Shown here: piece after piece, positions 814-11,405 of the stretch | Position numbering within the stretch: position 1 is the first letter of the stretch | How the letters are laid out: the number at the start of each line of letters is the position of its first letter | NCBI GenBank assembly: GCA_001179505.1 | Contig: CDMY01000033.1 | Span: forward strand, 142,984 to 206,983 | Source: Vitrella brassicaformis CCMP3155 | Taxonomy: Eukaryota > Protista > Chromerida | Reading direction: 5' to 3' | Length of the DNA stretch: 64,000 bases | Translations under genes and position numbers: made by a program | The notes under the pieces: generated by a model | Seen by the model: only the letters and a program-made list of their open reading frames with translations | Told to the model about the DNA's origin: nothing | Databases searched by the model: none

Positions 814-2288
814 GACAGCCTGATGGTCACGTCCTTGGGGGGCGTTAAATTACATCGCTGCCTACATTTTATATCCCTAGTGCTGGTTGTCGCGATGTTT
901 GCATTCGTTGACACCAAAGACTTGCTCACAGACATTGAACACGTTCTCACGTGAATCGGACTTATTCTCAAGTATCGGTTTTGTGTCAACCAATCAGACT
1001 TTGCTTGCCTAATGGACACGCCAATCGATTGAATGCACCATGTGTGTGTCTCTCTTTCCATCCATCTAAACAACCAACCGTCTCCCTGATACACATACAC
1101 ATACATACAAAAATACATACATGCCCACCGGCCCACCCACACATCACACACCAGCACGCACACACACGAGGCGGCGATGCATTTCGTGTGGATGAGCTGT
1201 GTTGTTGCTTGTATTGCTGCTGCAGGAGGGTGTTGGGGGCGTTGGTGGGGATGGTGACGGTGGGTCAGGACCGTCCCCAGACCGTTCAACAGAAAGATGC
1301 TCCAACGAACGACAGGTCGGTCGGTGAATGGCAACAGTTCACGCCAACACACACAGCACACCCACGTATCATTCATTCATCGCGGAGGTCTGAGCGGCGG
1401 GGTAGTTCGCTACTGGTGCAGGCCGTCAGGGAAAGGGAAGGGTTTGGCAGGGAGGGAGGGAGGGAGGGAGGGAGAGGGAGGTGGGCTGTGCGCTTGACGT
1501 GGGTGGACGAGCCGGTTTACACCGAGACGAATACCATTCAATTAATAAAGCTCTCTTACACACGCTCATCGGCAGTCAGTCGGTGGGCGTGGGAGTGATG
1601 CTGCCAGCTAGAGGCACATCCATCCAGCCCCTCCGATTCCTGCCAAGCAGAATCGGATGCTGGATATGCTCATGGTGCACCATTCGCTCATGCTCGTCCA
1701 ACAACACATACAGGCAGGTAGGCAGCTCTCGCTTTCAAACACCTTTGTATGCACTCACGCCACACCACACCATACCACACCACCCCACACGGCATGACGT
1801 GACTGACACCCATATCTGTGTGTCTGTTGGTATATCTAAAAACCGCAGCGAGTGGCGCCAGCCATCGATATTCCACTCACTCACGAGTGGTCTCTCCGGC
1901 TGGCGTAAAAATACAACGCAGAGGCAGTACCAATAGGTACGTATGGAGCTCTGACTTTCACGCGGGGCACGCAGACAGACAGGCAGCCGGAAGCAGACAG
2001 ACCAGTCATGTCATGACCCTCCCTCCTCTCGTGGGTGAGGTGACTGACTGACGGAGGGGACACGACTGGACTGTCTTTCTCGCACGCCCCGCCCCTGCGT
2101 TTCTCCCACCCCTCCCTCCCCTCCCCATCCCTCTATCTCTCAACGAGAAACATTGCACACAGACGAGTGCATGCCATGCACACATGGACTCTCTGCCGCT
2201 CTCCCAAGTGGCCGCGCTCTCAGCCCATCCAGCGACTTGTGTGTGGTGCTGGACGGACTTGGGCGTGCCTCGCTCCCATGACATCCGC

Positions 2289-4104
2289 TCACTTGCGCTG
2301 GCGGGCGCCAGAGGCCTCGCCCAACGCCTTCTCCTCTGCATATACACACACAGAAGGCACGCACACATACACATGGCTTGCCCATGTGTGTGTGGCCCCA
2401 CCCCGTAGATACGCATAGGAATGCATACATACCTTCTGCGAGTCTGCCCTCGAGTATCTGGTTGTTGAGTTGGAGCTTGAGCATCTGCAGCTGCGTCTCG
2501 AAGGCGGCTGATCGACGGGCCATTTCGGCAGCGTGTCGGGCATCGAGCAGCAGGATGTCCCACTCAGCACTGCGGAGCGAGATGAGGCAGATGGACGTGA
2601 TCATCTTGGCCACGCTGTCCATCGCGGTGTACCTACACGGCAGGCAGGGCAGGGAGACACGCAGACACAACACAATGGATGAATGTGTGGCAGCCCTGAT
2701 GCGTCCTGCCCTTGACGTGTGCGTGTTCACGTACATGAGCTGCTCTCCCTCAGATGGCAGGATGCCCAGCTGAGCCAGGTGGAAGAAAATGCCGTACTGC
2801 ACACACACACACCAGCCACATACGATGGATGCATGATGGATGGATGAGATTGTGGGTGGGACTCCCCACCCCCCGCATGTGTGCACGTCAGTGAGGTGAG
2901 AGGTTGGCTGCTTACCGATCCCCACCAGACGATGGTGAAGTAGAGGAGGCCCTTCTTGACCCACAGGTCGCCGTGCTTGTCCTGCACGCCATCCGTGAAC
3001 CGGGCCAGGTAGTAGGCCGACGCAAAGTACCCGATGTACGCCCCGTACACGCAGCCCCAGCGGATCAACGGATTCGCAAACACTGCAGCCCTGCAATGCA
3101 TTAACCAACAAAACACAAACGTGACAAGTGTGTGTGAGTAGAACACGGTACGGTGGGCTGGTGTTTCCTCTGTGTGTGGTTGGGTGAGAGGTGACTGGCT
3201 GGCTGGCTGACTGACCAGAGTCCCATCTGTAGGTAGATGGCGGTGATGACCATGGGGGGCAGCACCTTGCTCAGGGGCTGGTTGAAGATCAGACGGCCCG
3301 TCAGATACGTGTACATGGGAGCGGCCATCGTCCACTCGATGAAACGACCACCGTACACACGCCGCCCTGACGGAACAGCACACACGCACAGAGAGACACC
3401 ACACCTTGCATTAGTTAATGTCGCTCGCTGGCGTCAGTGAGTGTGTCGGTCTGTGTATCTCACCGACGACTGGGTCGAGGAATGCGGGTACCATGTCGTT
3501 GGCGAGGAAGATGTACGAGGTCATGATGACGCTCACAATGGTGACGTTGACGGTCGACACCTTCAGCTTGAAGTGCAGGTGGGCGTGGTCGGGGTGCTTC
3601 AAGATGTTCACTATCGTAAACACCATCGGAAACAACTGCACACCACCGAGACACACACACACACACACGATGTTCATTCGTCCACAGTGGGCGAGACATG
3701 TCCCCTCTCTCTCCCTCCCCCCCTGTGTTTTGGGCAGCCGGCTTACTTCCATCATGACGACGGTGCCAAGTACGTAGCATGCGATTTCGAAGAAGTAGAG
3801 CTCCGCACGGTTGGTGTGGACAGCGGGGTCGATGCGCTGTGCCGAGTAGAAGTGCAGGCTGCCCAGCAGCACCGCCCAGATGGCCGCATACGTCCCCGTG
3901 AAGACCGCACTCTCGTAGATGTTGAGTGTCTGCTTCTGCAGCACCTCCTTCTGCTCCTGCGTGTAGTCAGGATCAATTGGCTGCACGCGCACAAAGCACA
4001 CCCATGCACATACGCAGGGAGGGAGAGATGGTCAAGGTCAAGCACATCAGCGCATCTCCCATGTGACCCTCAGGCATGCCGCTCACCTTCAGAATGGATG
4101 CCAT
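2289..4104 (-). CDS. Microbial (type-1) rhodopsin A, 8 predicted TM helices, short C-terminal coiled coil, no enzyme domain
   Basis: The spliced model keeps one frame. Exons: 4104-4087, 3980-~3747, 3635-3464, 3366-3216, 3090-2916, 2796-2735, 2632-2433, 2335-2289. Helix C reads GRFIEWTMAAPMY (cf. bacteriorhodopsin RYADWLFTTP), helix F WWGSYGIFF, and helix G YTAMDSVAKMITS (DxxxK; Lys codon 2605-2607). Confidence 0.85.
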
Positions 4105-4341
4105 CGTGACGCGTTGATCAACTCGTTCAACTCACAAAGCAAAACCCGTTTGGCGCTTCTGGTGAAAGTTTGGTCTCTGAATTCTCTTGTCCTCCTGGCT
4201 GCAACGGTTAGCTGCACGTCGGATTTCCACCGGACTTCGGATTTCCACCGAAGTATCCGCGAGAGGCAGGTCACTCCTCCAACGGCTAGAGTTTTACGTG
4301 AAACCTTCTCTCAGCTTCCGCGGTGCGAGCTTGAATAAGGG
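4105..4341. promoter_or_regulatory. Putative bidirectional promoter of the rhodopsin pair
   Basis: 237 bp between the divergent ATGs, free of microsatellites. Contains direct repeat TCGGATTTCCACCG x2 (4219-4232, 4237-4250). Confidence 0.55.
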
Positions 4342-6945
4342 ATGGCGAGAATGACGTCCACTACTCATCCCACCGTGGGCGGTGCGCCGCCTATGGCACC
4401 CTCCAAGTGTTTCGACAAGGAGGGGATGGGCGGCGAGGAGGGTGCCCTTATCGTACGCAAGACAGTCGAGCGGGACGCCCGCAGCGAGAGCGTTGAGTCC
4501 AAGGCGAGTGTGGACGACACGCTGCCCTACTTTTGTCTGCGTGACCTGAAGTAGGCGCGCCCGCCACACGAGACACGACCCCCCTTGACTCCCTGTGTGA
4601 TGGTTGTGTCTGCAGGCTTTTTGCCTCGTACTTGCTGGCTTGGGGAGTGCTGGTGTGTGTGTGCAATGTGGTGGCTGGCCCGACCGCCAGCCGCAGCCCT
4701 CCCTCGGCCGACAGAGGGCTGTCCTCGGGGGCATTGGCAAAGGTGTTCGGCCTCTCGTCCATGATACTTCTCATCATGGTCGCCATGGAGCTCTTCCCAA
4801 TGATTTTTACCGGCGTGACAGTGCGCCGGGACCCTTCGGACAAGCGGCTGCTGTTCGTTCGAGAGGCGACAGCGGTGCTGTTTTTTGTCAAGGTGGTGTG
4901 TGCGGCGAGTTACGGGATCCTCACCTCGGGTCTGATGCCGTCCCAGCTGGACCACCTGACAGGTCGGCCGGTGATGAGCCTGCGGTCGATGGAGTGGGCC
5001 TGCAGCTTCCCCCTGATCCTGCGACTACACGGCCTGCACGCATTCAAGACCACCAATGAACGCATCTACGCCGCCATGATGCTCGGGTTCTTCACACCTA
5101 TGTTGCTGCACTGGTGAGCCCACCTGACCTGATGCTGGCTGGCTGGCTGGCTGGGGGACTGGCGGTGTCCATCCATCCATCGTTGCCTCTGCCTTTCTTT
5201 CTTTCTTGTGTGTGGTATGTGCCCCTAGGGGATCTCTGGTGCCTCTTACATGGCTGAGTTGGGCCATGCATGGCGCGGCGATTGCGGGCGTCATAGGAAC
5301 CATCTACACGACCTCCAAAGTCTCTCGTGGTGGCTGTGTTTCTGCGCCGTCCCCCCAGCAGCCTGATGGAGATGGAGGAGACTTGGTGGACACCATCTGC
5401 CACTTCATCCTGCTGTGGTCCATCCCCGTCTCGCTAACGGCTCACACGACCATCTTTTGTTTCGCACACAGCGGCCTGCTGTCGATTACGCTTGAGCAAG
5501 TGGGGCTGGCGGCCGTCGATGTGGCCATCAAGGCGGTCGAAACGGTCGCACTGGCGTGCCTCCGCAACAGCGGCTCCAGCCTCATTCTGGAGGAAGCCCA
5601 AAAGGGCTACGGCAACACCACCACAGCCGCCACACCACGACCACAACCGATTATCCAGGACACCGTCACCGCCCACACTCACACACACACGCGGCATGTG
5701 GGCACTTTTCCGGCCAGTGCGGCTGATGCCACCACAGGTGCCAAGGAGGGTGGGCACCTGCGGCAGCGGCAGCGGGGCCAGGCATCAGCAGCCCATGGTC
5801 AGGAGCAGCGGGTGGGCTCCTCCATGTCGTCCTACCATGGGCAGGGTCGGGTGCCCGTTCGCAGTGAGCAGCAGACGCGAGTGGACCTGCTGAAGTTGCA
5901 GCTGCAGAAAGAGCGGCTCGAACATCAGGTCAGCCACTCACCGGGGGTGTAACTACCTGGCAACTGATTCACTATCTGTGTCTCGATCGCTTTGGTGGAT
6001 GGTGCATGCAGCTTGAGCTGTTGGAGTTGAGTCGTCGTCCATCGGCCTCTGCTGCGACTGCCCCTGCCCTGAGCAAGAGCCGCCCCCCACATCCCCCTAC
6101 TGTGCTTCGCCGCAAGAAGAGCAACACCCTGGGGGATGCCAGTGCTGCCCACCCAGGGCTGCCGCCCCGGCCACGGGCCACCAGATCGTCCACCAGCCGG
6201 CTGCACGCCACACTGCCGCCGCGACAAGGCGACAAGCCGGACGGAGACTCGCAGCCGCCAGCTGGTGGGGTCGGGGGGGTGTCGGTGGGTGTGGCCAACA
6301 CCAAGAGCTTCACTCTCGCCGACACCTCTAGCAGCGGGACGAACACGAGTTCGGGCGAGATGGCTCGCAGCCATGTGGGTGCCCGATCTTCGCATCGGCA
6401 GCGGTTGATTGACCGCAAGATGGGGCACTCCACCAAGGGGGGCGGGGGGGCCGACGACGGCACTCTGGACGTCAGACTAGCACTCGGCAAGGCCGCTGAG
6501 ACTGCATGTGAACATTTTGTCAAGCGACGTAAGGAATGCACGGTCGGGACGGGACGCAGACACAGAGGGAGACGGCATGCGCATGTGTGGGCGTCTTTGT
6601 ACATGTGGGTTCAGGTAATGCCTGTTTGAAGAGTCTAAGCAACAAGACCCATCGCGACCTGGTTATCGAGTACCTGGTAAGCGGCTCGCCTCGCCTCGCC
6701 TCGCCGGGCTGCCTGCCTACCTGCCTGCCTGACATCAACAGATACCTGTATATTGTGTGCGTCTGTAGGTGTGCCAGAAGCGCGCGTCATTTCTGGTTCG
6801 ACGGCGTCGCTTGCGCCCACGCCTGACACCAACAATTGCCGCTGCTCTGCGCATGATGTACCAGCAGCAGCAGCCACCACATCATGACCTCACGGGGCAG
6901 TTGGGGGATGCATCTGGCAGTCTTGTGAAGGGGTGTGTGGGGTGA
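4342..6945 (+). CDS. Microbial (type-1) rhodopsin B, paralogue of A, 8 predicted TM helices, coiled coil and long low-complexity tail
   Basis: Exons: 4342-4550, 4616-5113, 5229-5928, 6011-6528, 6615-6676, 6769-6945, all in compatible phases. Helix C reads LRSMEWACSFPLIL and helix G GLAAVDVAIKAVET (DxxxK; Lys codon 5530-5532). It shares MELFPM(I/V)FT, YxxxWxVL and LKLQL with gene A. Confidence 0.8.
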
Positions 6946-8190
6946 AATGAATCAATGAGCTGGGATTTTTGCTTGCGGGGAGACACCGATCACTCTAATG
7001 CTGCTGTGCATGTCTGTCTGTCTGTCTATGTCTGTGTGTTGGGGGAAGTTAGGGAGGCCCTTGACTGACTGAGCTGACAAGGGGCATCCCATGCATTCAG
7101 CTGGGGGGGGGGGAGGTGAGGGCATTCCATTCACCATGCCACTGGGTGGGGTGGGGTGGGCGTTTCAGCCAGCAGGGCGAGTCAGGGCAGGGGGAGTGGG
7201 GGATTTGAAACGACAGGGGCGGTGCGGTGCGCCTGGCGTGAATGCATATCATATGTGCATGCCATATGATACATCCATCTCCTGTATGTATGTATGTATG
7301 TGTGTATGTATGTGGGGGCGGATGTGTGTGGATGGGATGTGGCTGTCCTGTCTGTCAGTCAGTCAGTACACAGACTGACTGAGATGGTTTGTATGGGTGC
7401 CGTGCGGTGGGTACGTATGGGTGGGTATGAATGAGGATGGGTGTAGTGCGCTGTGAATGTTATTACCCACCTCGGCTACCTGTTCAGCCTTGTTCGCTTT
7501 TTGCGCACGCAACACACGTGTGTGTGCAGGTGTCGGTCATGGCTGACCAAGGAGCCGAGAGGGTAATGTAATGGGTGCTGTGGAACTAACTGCTGCCTCA
7601 ACTCAACCCGATTTCTTGTCCATCCATCCACCGTGCTTCCTTTTATGTGTCTGCGTGTAGCTTACATGTATGCGTGTGCGTGTGCGTGCGTGCGGGTGGG
7701 GCGGGTTGTCTGCACGTCCTAACGCTACTGCGATGCTCTGGGTACCTACCTGCGGTCTTTCTTTCCCTGACTTGTCCAAGGCCTGCCTGACACACATGAG
7801 TGAGTGAATGAGTGAGTGGAGCAGACACCTTCTAGTGTAGGGACATAGAGCATGTTGGTGCATGCGGGACCATACAGACACCAGAGAACATTGCTTACAA
7901 AGAGAGAATTTCAATCATGAACTCCACGAATTACGGCCCCCATGCACAGCAGGCGGCCCCCATACACAGCAGGAAGGACAGCACATTCATGGAGTCAGTC
8001 GTGTCTGAATCATATGTTTGTATGTATAGCACCACACCGGGTCATCCATCCATCCATCCGCCCATCCATACGTCTCTCTGTCTGCACATAATGGACGCAT
8101 GGATGGGAGGCTACGCTAGGACAAAGTCAGTCCGGCACTGCCAAGCAGGGATTCAGGCTACAACGGTGCTACCATCCTATGGGTGGTAAT

Positions 8191-11405
<3,215 letters not shown>

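What the first reader, a model, noticed from the sequence alone, without database searches (positions are those of the whole stretch)
2433..3366. Rhodopsin A has an unusual E-A-L helix-C motif and a near-intact retinal pocket
Seen: positions equivalent to bacteriorhodopsin D85/T89/D96 are E/A/L. R82, W86, P91, W182, Y185, D212 and K216 equivalents are present, and P186 is replaced by Gly. Established: ion pumps use motifs such as DTD, DTE, NDQ and TSA; lack of an acidic residue at 96 argues against a classical proton pump. Inference: a sensory pigment or atypical channel with a shifted spectrum. The protein ends ~55 aa after the Lys.
Basis: partly seen in the sequence, partly recalled or inferred. 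Interest (0 to 1): 0.7.

Follow-up and report, generated by a model that had tools for sequence, protein, structure and literature searches.

The report
Stand-alone bestrhodopsin-like light sensor of Vitrella
This is a real, expressed gene of the alga Vitrella brassicaformis for an eight-helix retinal protein whose closest studied relatives are the light-sensing domains of bestrhodopsin channels, but it has no channel or enzyme attached, and its "odd" E-A-L motif is normal for that branch of rhodopsins.

Summary
The residues were read correctly. Rhodopsin A is an 8-exon gene on the minus strand (4104..2289) encoding 352 aa. It is identical to a Vitrella brassicaformis database protein, and all seven introns are confirmed by transcript contigs. 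BR positions 85/89/96 are E152/A156/L163. R82, W86, P91, W182, Y185, D212 and K216 equivalents are present, and P186 is Gly. One short last exon was missed, so the protein ends 72 aa after the Lys, not about 55.

The motif is not unusual in its own lineage. The only strong match among solved structures is bestrhodopsin 7PL9 (E 3.9e-48), whose domains are E-D-L with the same Gly. Across 124 relatives found among 1.84 billion proteins, E-x-L dominates. E-A-L recurs in histidine-kinase/cyclase-type opsins.

The model (pLDDT 91.5) has eight TM helices, and TM7 continues as a conserved cytoplasmic helix of about 60 residues. There is no effector domain. Orthologs exist in Chromera and in the non-photosynthetic predator Alphamonas.

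The most likely function is a non-pumping photosensor that signals to a partner through the TM7 extension. Its colour and its partner are unknown. It is uncharacterised: a new architectural variant of a known kind.

The parts
4105..4276 (-). 5' UTR of rhodopsin A mRNA
   Evidence: Transcript contigs L003 and L005 reach 4276 at 100% identity. Runs X1 and X2 do the same.
4087..4104 (-). Exon 1 coding part (MASILK)
   Evidence: ATG at 4104 with a GT donor after 4087. The joint 4087/3980 is seen in three runs.
3747..3980 (-). Exon 2: N-terminus, TM0 and the start of helix A
   Evidence: The model has helices 27-50 and 65-97.
3464..3635 (-). Exon 3: the rest of helix A (invariant E84, P87), helix B and the B-C loop
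   Evidence: Helix B has no acidic residue.
3216..3366 (-). Exon 4: helix C with R149, E152, W153, A156, P158 and L163, and helix D
   Evidence: This exon alone matches both rhodopsin domains of 7PL9 (E 6e-8).
2916..3090 (-). Exon 5: helices D/E and the first half of helix F (W248)
   Evidence: This exon alone gave no PDB match.
2735..2796 (-). Exon 6: the rest of helix F (Y251, G252, F255) and the F-G loop
2433..2632 (-). Exon 7: helix G with D276 and K280 (Schiff-base Lys), and the conserved TM7 extension (RSAEWD...LKLQL)
   Evidence: It matches the post-TM7 segments of both 7PL9 domains and is invariant in many positions among the three orthologs.
2289..2335 (-).
   Evidence: The joint 2433/2335 is seen in three runs. 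It is identical to the end of P0001.
2121..2288 (-). 3' UTR; the mRNA ends here, so no effector domain follows
   Evidence: Transcript contigs end at 2121-2129.
4277..4324 (.). A 48-bp gap between the assembled 5' ends of the divergent A and B transcripts (putative shared promoter)
   Evidence: A transcripts start at 4276 and the B transcript contig starts at 4325. Shared regulation is inferred, not shown.
4325..7101 (+). Neighbouring rhodopsin B gene (717 aa, P0013, helix C E-S-L), given as context
   Evidence: Transcript L027 maps as six exons. Its only Pfam hit is Bac_rhodopsin. It is about 29% identical to A.

Best explanation
Rhodopsin A is an expressed Vitrella brassicaformis gene for a stand-alone eight-helix ("type Ib") microbial rhodopsin of the branch that also gave rise to the rhodopsin domains of bestrhodopsins. 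It should bind retinal at K280, with E152 and D276 as the counterion pair. It lacks a proton donor (L163) and the Thr/Asp at position 89 (A156), so it is not a pump. It lacks the acidic helix-B ladder of channelrhodopsins, so it is unlikely to conduct ions on its own. It has no fused enzyme or channel. Instead TM7 continues straight into a conserved cytoplasmic helix of about 60 residues, homologous to the helix that links each bestrhodopsin rhodopsin domain to the next module. The most likely mechanism, which is inferred, is that light-driven movement of TM7 passes along this helix to a partner protein. That partner could be another copy of itself or a separately encoded effector. The E-x-L pattern and Gly186 are inherited family traits. 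Only Ala at 89 separates it from bestrhodopsin's counterion triad.
For: Gene and expression: the 8-exon model equals database protein P0001. Three transcript contigs and three runs show all seven GT..AG introns and an mRNA end at about 2121.

Homology: 7PL9 bestrhodopsin scores E 3.9e-48 with both domains matched. The next hit, Chrimson, scores 4e-5. The TM7 extension aligns to both post-TM7 segments of 7PL9. In the tree, the A-clade and the bestrhodopsin clade group with support 93/90.

Fold: pLDDT is 91.5, with eight TM helices and helix 265-351 continuous. VIA-align gives Z 29.0 to the 8-TM Rh-PDE including TM0, Z 26.3 to 7PL9 over 289 residues, and Z 25.7 to BR at rmsd 1.6 A.

Family traits: the motif tally is ENL 24, ETL 12, EAL 9, EDL 9 and ESL 7, and Gly at 186 is nearly invariant.

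Conservation: orthologs in Chromera and Alphamonas edax keep E, A, D, K and much of residues 287-326.

No effector: Pfam finds nothing beyond the rhodopsin in the paralogs, and no bestrophin lies on any rhodopsin contig.
Against: No function was measured. Signalling through the C-terminal helix is inferred from homology and conservation only. A simple heptad count does not give one clean coiled-coil register. No partner is identified: the A+B complex job gave no verdict, and the bestrhodopsin-type channel domain finds nothing in this genome. The grouping with bestrhodopsins falls just short of the tree tool's star threshold, and the alignment was fitted to the A profile. Retinal binding itself is assumed.
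Confidence: 0.6

Rival explanations
1. A and the divergently transcribed rhodopsin B form a two-subunit (heterodimeric) photoreceptor, analogous to the tandem R1-R2 of bestrhodopsin or to NeoR/RGC heterodimers.
For: The two genes lie head to head, with 48 bp between the assembled transcript ends. Both are expressed. Both carry an LKLQL-type helical segment after TM7. The relatives occur as tandem domains.
Against: A has orthologs in Chromera and Alphamonas, but no B ortholog was found by the word search or among the profile hits, where P0013 is a lone long branch. B's helical segment lies about 110 residues beyond its TM7, behind low-complexity sequence. Synteny in Chromera could not be checked.
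Confidence: 0.15
2. A is the light-sensing subunit of a "split bestrhodopsin": it docks non-covalently, through its TM7 extension, onto a separately encoded bestrophin channel and gates it.
For: The closest characterised relatives are bestrophin-fused (P0011 is rhodopsin + Bestrophin_2). The extension is homologous to the rhodopsin-to-bestrophin linker, and the match to the R2 linker is the better one. The genome has at least 7 Bestrophin_2 loci.
Against: None of those loci lies on a rhodopsin contig. The channel domain of a true bestrhodopsin finds nothing in the genome at E<=0.001. Bestrophin_2 genes are common in algae and bacteria for unrelated reasons (controls).
Confidence: 0.1
3. A is itself a light-gated ion channel (an atypical channelrhodopsin).
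For: Glu at the D85 position is typical of channelrhodopsins. Chrimson is the second-best PDB sequence match. Other Vitrella rhodopsins are proven channels (PMC10147648).
Against: [quoted passage not shown] A is far closer to bestrhodopsin (E 3.9e-48) than to any channelrhodopsin (4e-5). The characterised Vitrella channels CEL94649 and VbACR2 have different counterion residues and are different proteins.
Confidence: 0.1
4. A is a light-driven ion pump with a novel motif.
For: The fold and Schiff-base region are intact. The core superposes on BR at 1.6 A.
Against: There is no donor at 96 and no Thr/Ser/Asp at 89. It has an 8-TM topology and a long signalling-type helix. All characterised relatives are sensors coupled to effectors.
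Confidence: 0.03

Closest known systems
Bestrhodopsin rhodopsin domains (Phaeocystis antarctica RRB, PDB 7PL9; RB type, e.g. Cymbomonas P0011/P0137)
   Same: They are clear homologues (E 3.9e-48; 22-24% identity over about 290-317 aligned positions). Both have 8 TM helices including TM0. They share GRRVY before helix C, E at 85, Leu at 96, WW-x-x-YG in helix F (Gly at 186), M-D-x-x-x-K in helix G, an R-x-x-[EQ]-W-[DE] motif and a long helix after TM7, and a Glu in helix A.
   Different: A has no bestrophin domain and is not tandem. Position 89 is Ala rather than Asp, so there is no counterion triad. Position 91 keeps Pro (bestrhodopsin has Cys/Thr) and position 215 is Ala (bestrhodopsin has Met). 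Far-red absorption and 11-cis photochemistry are untested.
8-TM (type Ib) enzymerhodopsins: Rh-PDE (7cj3/7d7q), RhGC/NeoR, HKR/2c-Cyclop
   Same: Rh-PDE is the best structural match (Z 29.0, TM0 included). TM7 continues into a cytoplasmic helix. The exact E-A-L motif occurs in the HKR-cyclase-type protein P0010 and in P0014 and P0075.
   Different: No enzyme domain follows the helix. Sequence similarity is much weaker than to bestrhodopsin, and these proteins sit on the other side of the tree.
Sensory rhodopsin II with its transducer HtrII
   Same: It is also a rhodopsin without its own effector that signals to a separate protein. Structural match Z 26.5, rmsd 1.6 A.
   Different: SRII has 7 TM helices, is archaeal, has a D-T-F type helix C, and contacts its partner through TM helices F/G rather than a C-terminal helix. 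This is an analogy of logic only.
Colpodellida channelrhodopsins of Vitrella (CEL94649, VbACR2; PMC10147648)
   Same: Same organism, and they are microbial rhodopsins.
   Different: They are different proteins with other residues at the 85/212 positions (VbACR2 has Gln128/Asp257). They are proven channels and are not close in sequence.

Membership tests
Microbial (type I) rhodopsin | Seven-helix core with a Schiff-base Lys in helix G and the R82/W86/D212 equivalents | tested here: met
   K280, R149, W153 and D276 are present. Foldseek probability is 1.00; BR gives Z 25.7 at rmsd 1.6 A over 217 residues.
Microbial (type I) rhodopsin | Match to Pfam PF01036 Bac_rhodopsin | tested here: inconclusive
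   P0001 and its exons give no Pfam hit even at E<=10. The ortholog P0002 and the paralogs P0004-P0006 do hit PF01036.
Type Ib (8-TM) rhodopsins | An extra N-terminal transmembrane helix (TM0) before helix A | tested here: met
   The model has a helix at 27-50 with pLDDT >90. It aligns to TM0 of Rh-PDE (model 25-294) and of 7PL9 (model 21-322).
Type Ib (8-TM) rhodopsins | Cytosolic N-terminus and a fused cytoplasmic effector domain | tested here: not met
   The topology is not testable here. The effector is absent: the stop codon is at 2289-2291 and the mRNA ends at about 2121.
Bestrhodopsin | Rhodopsin domain homologous to those of 7PL9 | tested here: met
   E 3.9e-48, with both domains matched. 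Tree grouping support is 93/90.
Bestrhodopsin | Fusion to a bestrophin channel (one or two rhodopsin domains in tandem) | tested here: not met
   It is a single domain of 352 aa. Bestrophin hits lie on other contigs only. Paralog hits of A lie only on C33, C553, C423 and C144.
Bestrhodopsin | Counterion triad: carboxylates at BR positions 85, 89 and 212 | tested here: not met
   A has E152, A156 and D276. The triad is described in PMC12875766.
Bestrhodopsin | Far-red absorption (about 660 nm) and an all-trans to 11-cis bistable photoreaction | not testable with these tools
   This needs spectroscopy. The properties are described in PMC10962995.
Outward proton pumps (DTD/DTE) | Asp85 acceptor, Thr89 and a carboxylic donor at 96 | tested here: not met
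   A is E-A-L, aligned against the DTD pumps 6kfq and 6gyh.
Channelrhodopsins | Polar/acidic helix B (TM2 glutamates) lining a pore | tested here: not met
   Helix B, residues 102-129, has no Asp or Glu. The criterion comes from PMC13739731.
HKR / 2c-Cyclop | Histidine kinase, receiver and cyclase domains after the opsin | tested here: not met
   These domains are absent in A and present in the E-A-L relative P0010.

The most novel reading that the evidence does not exclude
A represents an unfused form of the bestrhodopsin photoreceptor that works in trans. It would be a free 8-TM rhodopsin whose conserved TM7-extension helix docks onto and gates a separately encoded channel or effector. Bestrhodopsin-like bistable or 11-cis photochemistry might be retained without the third carboxylate. 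It is conserved even in the non-photosynthetic predator Alphamonas.
Probability: 0.15. Interest if true: 0.75.

Novelty: new variant of a known kind. Interest (0 to 1): 0.45.

Why it matters
Every characterised 8-TM microbial rhodopsin carries its effector in the same polypeptide: a cyclase, phosphodiesterase, histidine kinase or bestrophin channel. A conserved, expressed, effector-less member that sits next to the bestrhodopsins would show one of two things. Either this module can signal in trans, or it shows what the module looked like before fusion. It is also a natural Asp-to-Ala variant of the counterion triad, the feature debated as the cause of far-red absorption. Its presence in Vitrella, Chromera and the heterotroph Alphamonas points to a light response, probably of flagellated stages, that does not depend on photosynthesis in the closest free-living relatives of apicomplexan parasites. 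The specific claim of the finding, an unprecedented motif, is deflated.

Tried and rejected
- Pfam on the six ORF pieces and on the full protein found nothing for A.
- Exon 5 alone gave no hit against the PDB.
- PF01036 and the language-model atlas gave only generic rhodopsin leads.
- Complex prediction of A with B (residues 55-480) gave no verdict (scores 0.33, 0.02, 0.02). It is evidence neither for nor against binding.
- PF01062 bestrophin gave one sub-threshold hit.
- The bestrophin domain of a genuine RB bestrhodopsin (P0011:440-800) found nothing in the genome. This means "not found with this query", not absent.
- The word search for orthologs of B returned only B itself.
- The original bestrhodopsin paper (Rozenberg 2022) is not held, so I could not check whether unfused relatives are mentioned there.
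- The 2c-Cyclop paper gives no helix-C residues.
- Literature searches for chromerid or Alphamonas rhodopsins of this type, and for the UniProt id of the Chromera ortholog, found nothing.
- A heptad count on residues 285-352 gave no single clean register.
- The search of earlier findings by words was blank.
- I rejected predicting "not far-red because Asp89 is lost", because NeoR D140N shifts the maximum by only 4 nm.
Exons were searched singly by reference. After that, the identical database record P0001 returned was used.

Full report
WHAT IS THERE

The window is eukaryotic, about 59% G+C with short GT..AG introns. It is contig C33 of a 72.7-Mb assembly. A database protein named as coming from Vitrella brassicaformis CCMP3155 identifies the organism.

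On the minus strand I read eight exons: 4104-4087, 3980-3747, 3635-3464, 3366-3216, 3090-2916, 2796-2735, 2632-2433 and 2335-2289. They total 1059 nt, or 352 codons plus the stop. I searched the exons one by one, by reference. I built or submitted no joined model. The word search on an ORF holding exons 6-7 returned a 352-aa record, P0001. Its sequence equals the exon model residue for residue, and that record was used from then on.

Three transcript contigs (L003-L005) carry the CDS uninterrupted and map to exactly these exons at 99-100% identity. Their 5' ends are at 4276 and their 3' ends near 2121. Contigs of three runs show all seven joints with CT..AC ends on the plus strand, which is GT..AG on the gene's strand. 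The gene is real, spliced and expressed, and nothing is encoded beyond residue 352.

THE OBSERVATION

- Helix C reads R149-F-I-E152-W153-T-M-A156-A157-P158-M-Y-T-Y-L163.
- Helix F reads W248-G-S-Y251-G252-I-F-F255.
- Helix G reads D276-S-V-A279-K280.

The register is not in doubt, for four reasons. The R/W/P and D/K spacings are those of BR. phmmer aligns the stretch to Chrimson RYFEWLLSCP and to 8xx8 RYITWTFTTP. A 34-sequence family profile aligns it to the DTD pumps 6kfq and 6gyh and to the TSD pump 7zou, column for column. The predicted structure superposes on BR at 1.6 A over 217 residues, model 62-291 on BR 5-227.

So E/A/L, the listed conserved residues and Pro186->Gly are all confirmed. 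A last 47-nt exon adds 15 residues, giving 72 residues after the Lys. "Near-intact pocket" is generous. W189 is Phe and T90 is Ala. By my reading of the profile alignment, the M118, W138, S141 and T142 equivalents are Tyr, Val, Ala and Tyr.

WHAT IT IS RELATED TO

Among solved structures only bestrhodopsin 7PL9 matches strongly (E 3.9e-48). Both of its rhodopsin domains are matched, and the alignment runs on through the helix that follows TM7. The next hit, Chrimson, is at 4e-5. Single exons 4 and 7 already find 7PL9.

Bestrhodopsin helix C is RYMEWTIDACGLVYL / RYMEWAVDATGLIWL, which is E-D-L. Its helix F is VWWVLYG, with the same Gly.

A profile of A and its two orthologs, scored against 1.84 billion representative proteins, finds only 124 proteins at E<=1e-3 and 4 at E<=1e-30. 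Tallying the three motif positions over these gives ENL 24, ETL 12, EAL 9, EDL 9 and ESL 7. Gly at 186 is nearly invariant. Glu85, a hydrophobic residue at 96 and Gly186 are therefore lineage traits.

E-A-L itself occurs outside the A group. It is found in P0010, a 1303-aa opsin-PAS-HisKA-HATPase-receiver-cyclase protein, and in P0014, P0075, P0067, P0073 and P0074. What separates A from bestrhodopsin is Ala instead of Asp at 89. That Asp is the third member of the "counterion triad" shared by NeoR and bestrhodopsin (PMC12875766).

FAMILY AND DISTRIBUTION

Orthologs at 54-55% identity exist in Chromera velia (P0002, A0A0G4GEQ8) and in Alphamonas edax (P0003). From general knowledge, Alphamonas is a non-photosynthetic colpodellid predator. 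All three keep E, A, D and K, and many positions of residues 287-326.

Vitrella has further paralogs:
- on C553: P0004, 708 aa, E-A-L, with a large E-F loop insert;
- on C423: P0005, E-S-L;
- on C144: D-D-Q.

Chromera has P0006 (G-A-L).

A careful ML tree of 52 domain sequences groups this chrompodellid set with the bestrhodopsin clade (UFBoot 93 / SH-aLRT 90). The bestrhodopsins themselves are at 100/99. HKR-type and other opsins lie on the other side. Caveats: the alignment was fitted to the A profile, three very long branches were left out, and the support is below the tool's star threshold.

STRUCTURE

The AlphaFold2 model has mean pLDDT 91.5 and pTM 0.82. It shows helices at 27-50 (TM0), 65-97, 102-129, 147-168, 173-195, 199-224 and 234-259. 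One unbroken helix runs from 265 to 351, so TM7 continues for about 60 residues into the cytoplasm.

The best structural matches are:
- the 8-TM Rh-PDE transmembrane domain, Z 29.0, TM0 included;
- sensory rhodopsin II, Z 26.5;
- 7PL9, Z 26.3, 289 aligned residues, highest Foldseek TMq at 0.70;
- BR, Z 25.7.

No Pfam domain other than the rhodopsin occurs in any of the paralogs.

HOW IT PROBABLY WORKS

Shown:
- an intact Lys/Glu/Asp Schiff-base region;
- no carboxylic residue at 96 and no hydroxyl or carboxyl at 89;
- no acidic residue in helix B;
- an 8-TM fold;
- a conserved TM7 extension homologous to the inter-module helix of bestrhodopsin;
- no effector domain;
- expression.

Inferred: it is a retinal photosensor, not a pump, and probably not a channel by itself. 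The TM3 motif classifies pumps, whereas channel function rests mainly on TM2 glutamates (PMC13739731). It would relay light-induced TM7 movement through the extension helix to a partner.

Who the partner is remains open.
- The divergently transcribed rhodopsin B (717 aa, E-S-L) has 48 bp between its transcript end and A's, which makes it an obvious candidate. However, no B ortholog was found, while A is conserved. The complex job gave no verdict.
- A separately encoded bestrophin is conceivable, since there are at least 7 Bestrophin_2 loci. None is linked to a rhodopsin, and a true bestrhodopsin channel domain finds nothing in this genome.

Colour cannot be predicted. It is tempting to say that losing Asp89 abolishes far-red absorption. 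But in NeoR that Asp is protonated, and D140N shifts the maximum by only 4 nm.

COMPARISON AND NOVELTY

It works most like the sensor modules of type Ib rhodopsins. Its nearest kin are bestrhodopsin domains. It is not a bestrhodopsin, because the fusion and triad features were tested and not met. It is not an enzymerhodopsin, a channelrhodopsin or a pump.

The characterised Vitrella rhodopsins, CEL94649 and VbACR2, are different proteins. I found no paper on this group in the held library. The founding bestrhodopsin paper could not be read.

I rate it a new architectural variant of a known kind. It is moderately interesting as a family. The specific "unusual motif" claim is largely explained by ancestry.

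Noticed in passing
window 4325-7101 (+): Rhodopsin B (P0013, 717 aa, six exons) keeps Lys and Asp in helix G (VDVAIK) and has an E-S-L helix C. Its W182/Y185/P186 equivalents are L/H/T, and it has a roughly 340-residue low-complexity tail with no Pfam domain. No ortholog was found by the word search, and it is a lone long branch in the tree.
   Followed up: partly
window 4277-4324: Only 48 bp separate the assembled 5' ends of the divergent A and B transcripts, a very tight putative bidirectional promoter.
   Followed up: partly
L016 (G000:C553:4839-6575), L017 (G000:C423, locus 7090-8416), L018 (G000:C144, locus 7690-8007): There are three more Vitrella paralogs of this rhodopsin group. C553 is P0004 (E-A-L, 708 aa) with an insert of about 140 residues in the E-F loop and a long tail. 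C423 is P0005 (E-S-L). C144 has a D-D-Q helix C (KIFDWLLDCPLLFLQ).
   Followed up: partly
P0021 (1084 aa, Logan contig; not in the window): This relative pairs an E-A-I rhodopsin domain with a C-terminal Ser/Thr protein kinase domain (Pkinase, E 3.6e-34), an opsin-protein-kinase fusion. I did not check whether it has been described.
   Followed up: no
window 2967-3982, run X3 (sediment metatranscriptome): Short RNA contigs, 95-99% identical to exons 2-5 and carrying two of the spliced joints, occur in a sediment metatranscriptome. A close relative of this strain therefore seems to express the gene in nature.
   Followed up: no
P0016, P0037, P0038 (not in the window): Q-S/T-F rhodopsins, one of them from the diplonemid Namystynia karyoxenos, form the strongly supported sister group (100/99) of the bestrhodopsin domains.
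   Followed up: no
window 3500-3502 (residue E84 of A); B residue E124: An invariant Glu-x-x-Pro in the middle of helix A (MELFP) is shared by A, its orthologs and B. The Glu is also present in both 7PL9 domains (FFIEG / FLIES). A buried carboxylate conserved across the clade, with unknown role.
   Followed up: partly
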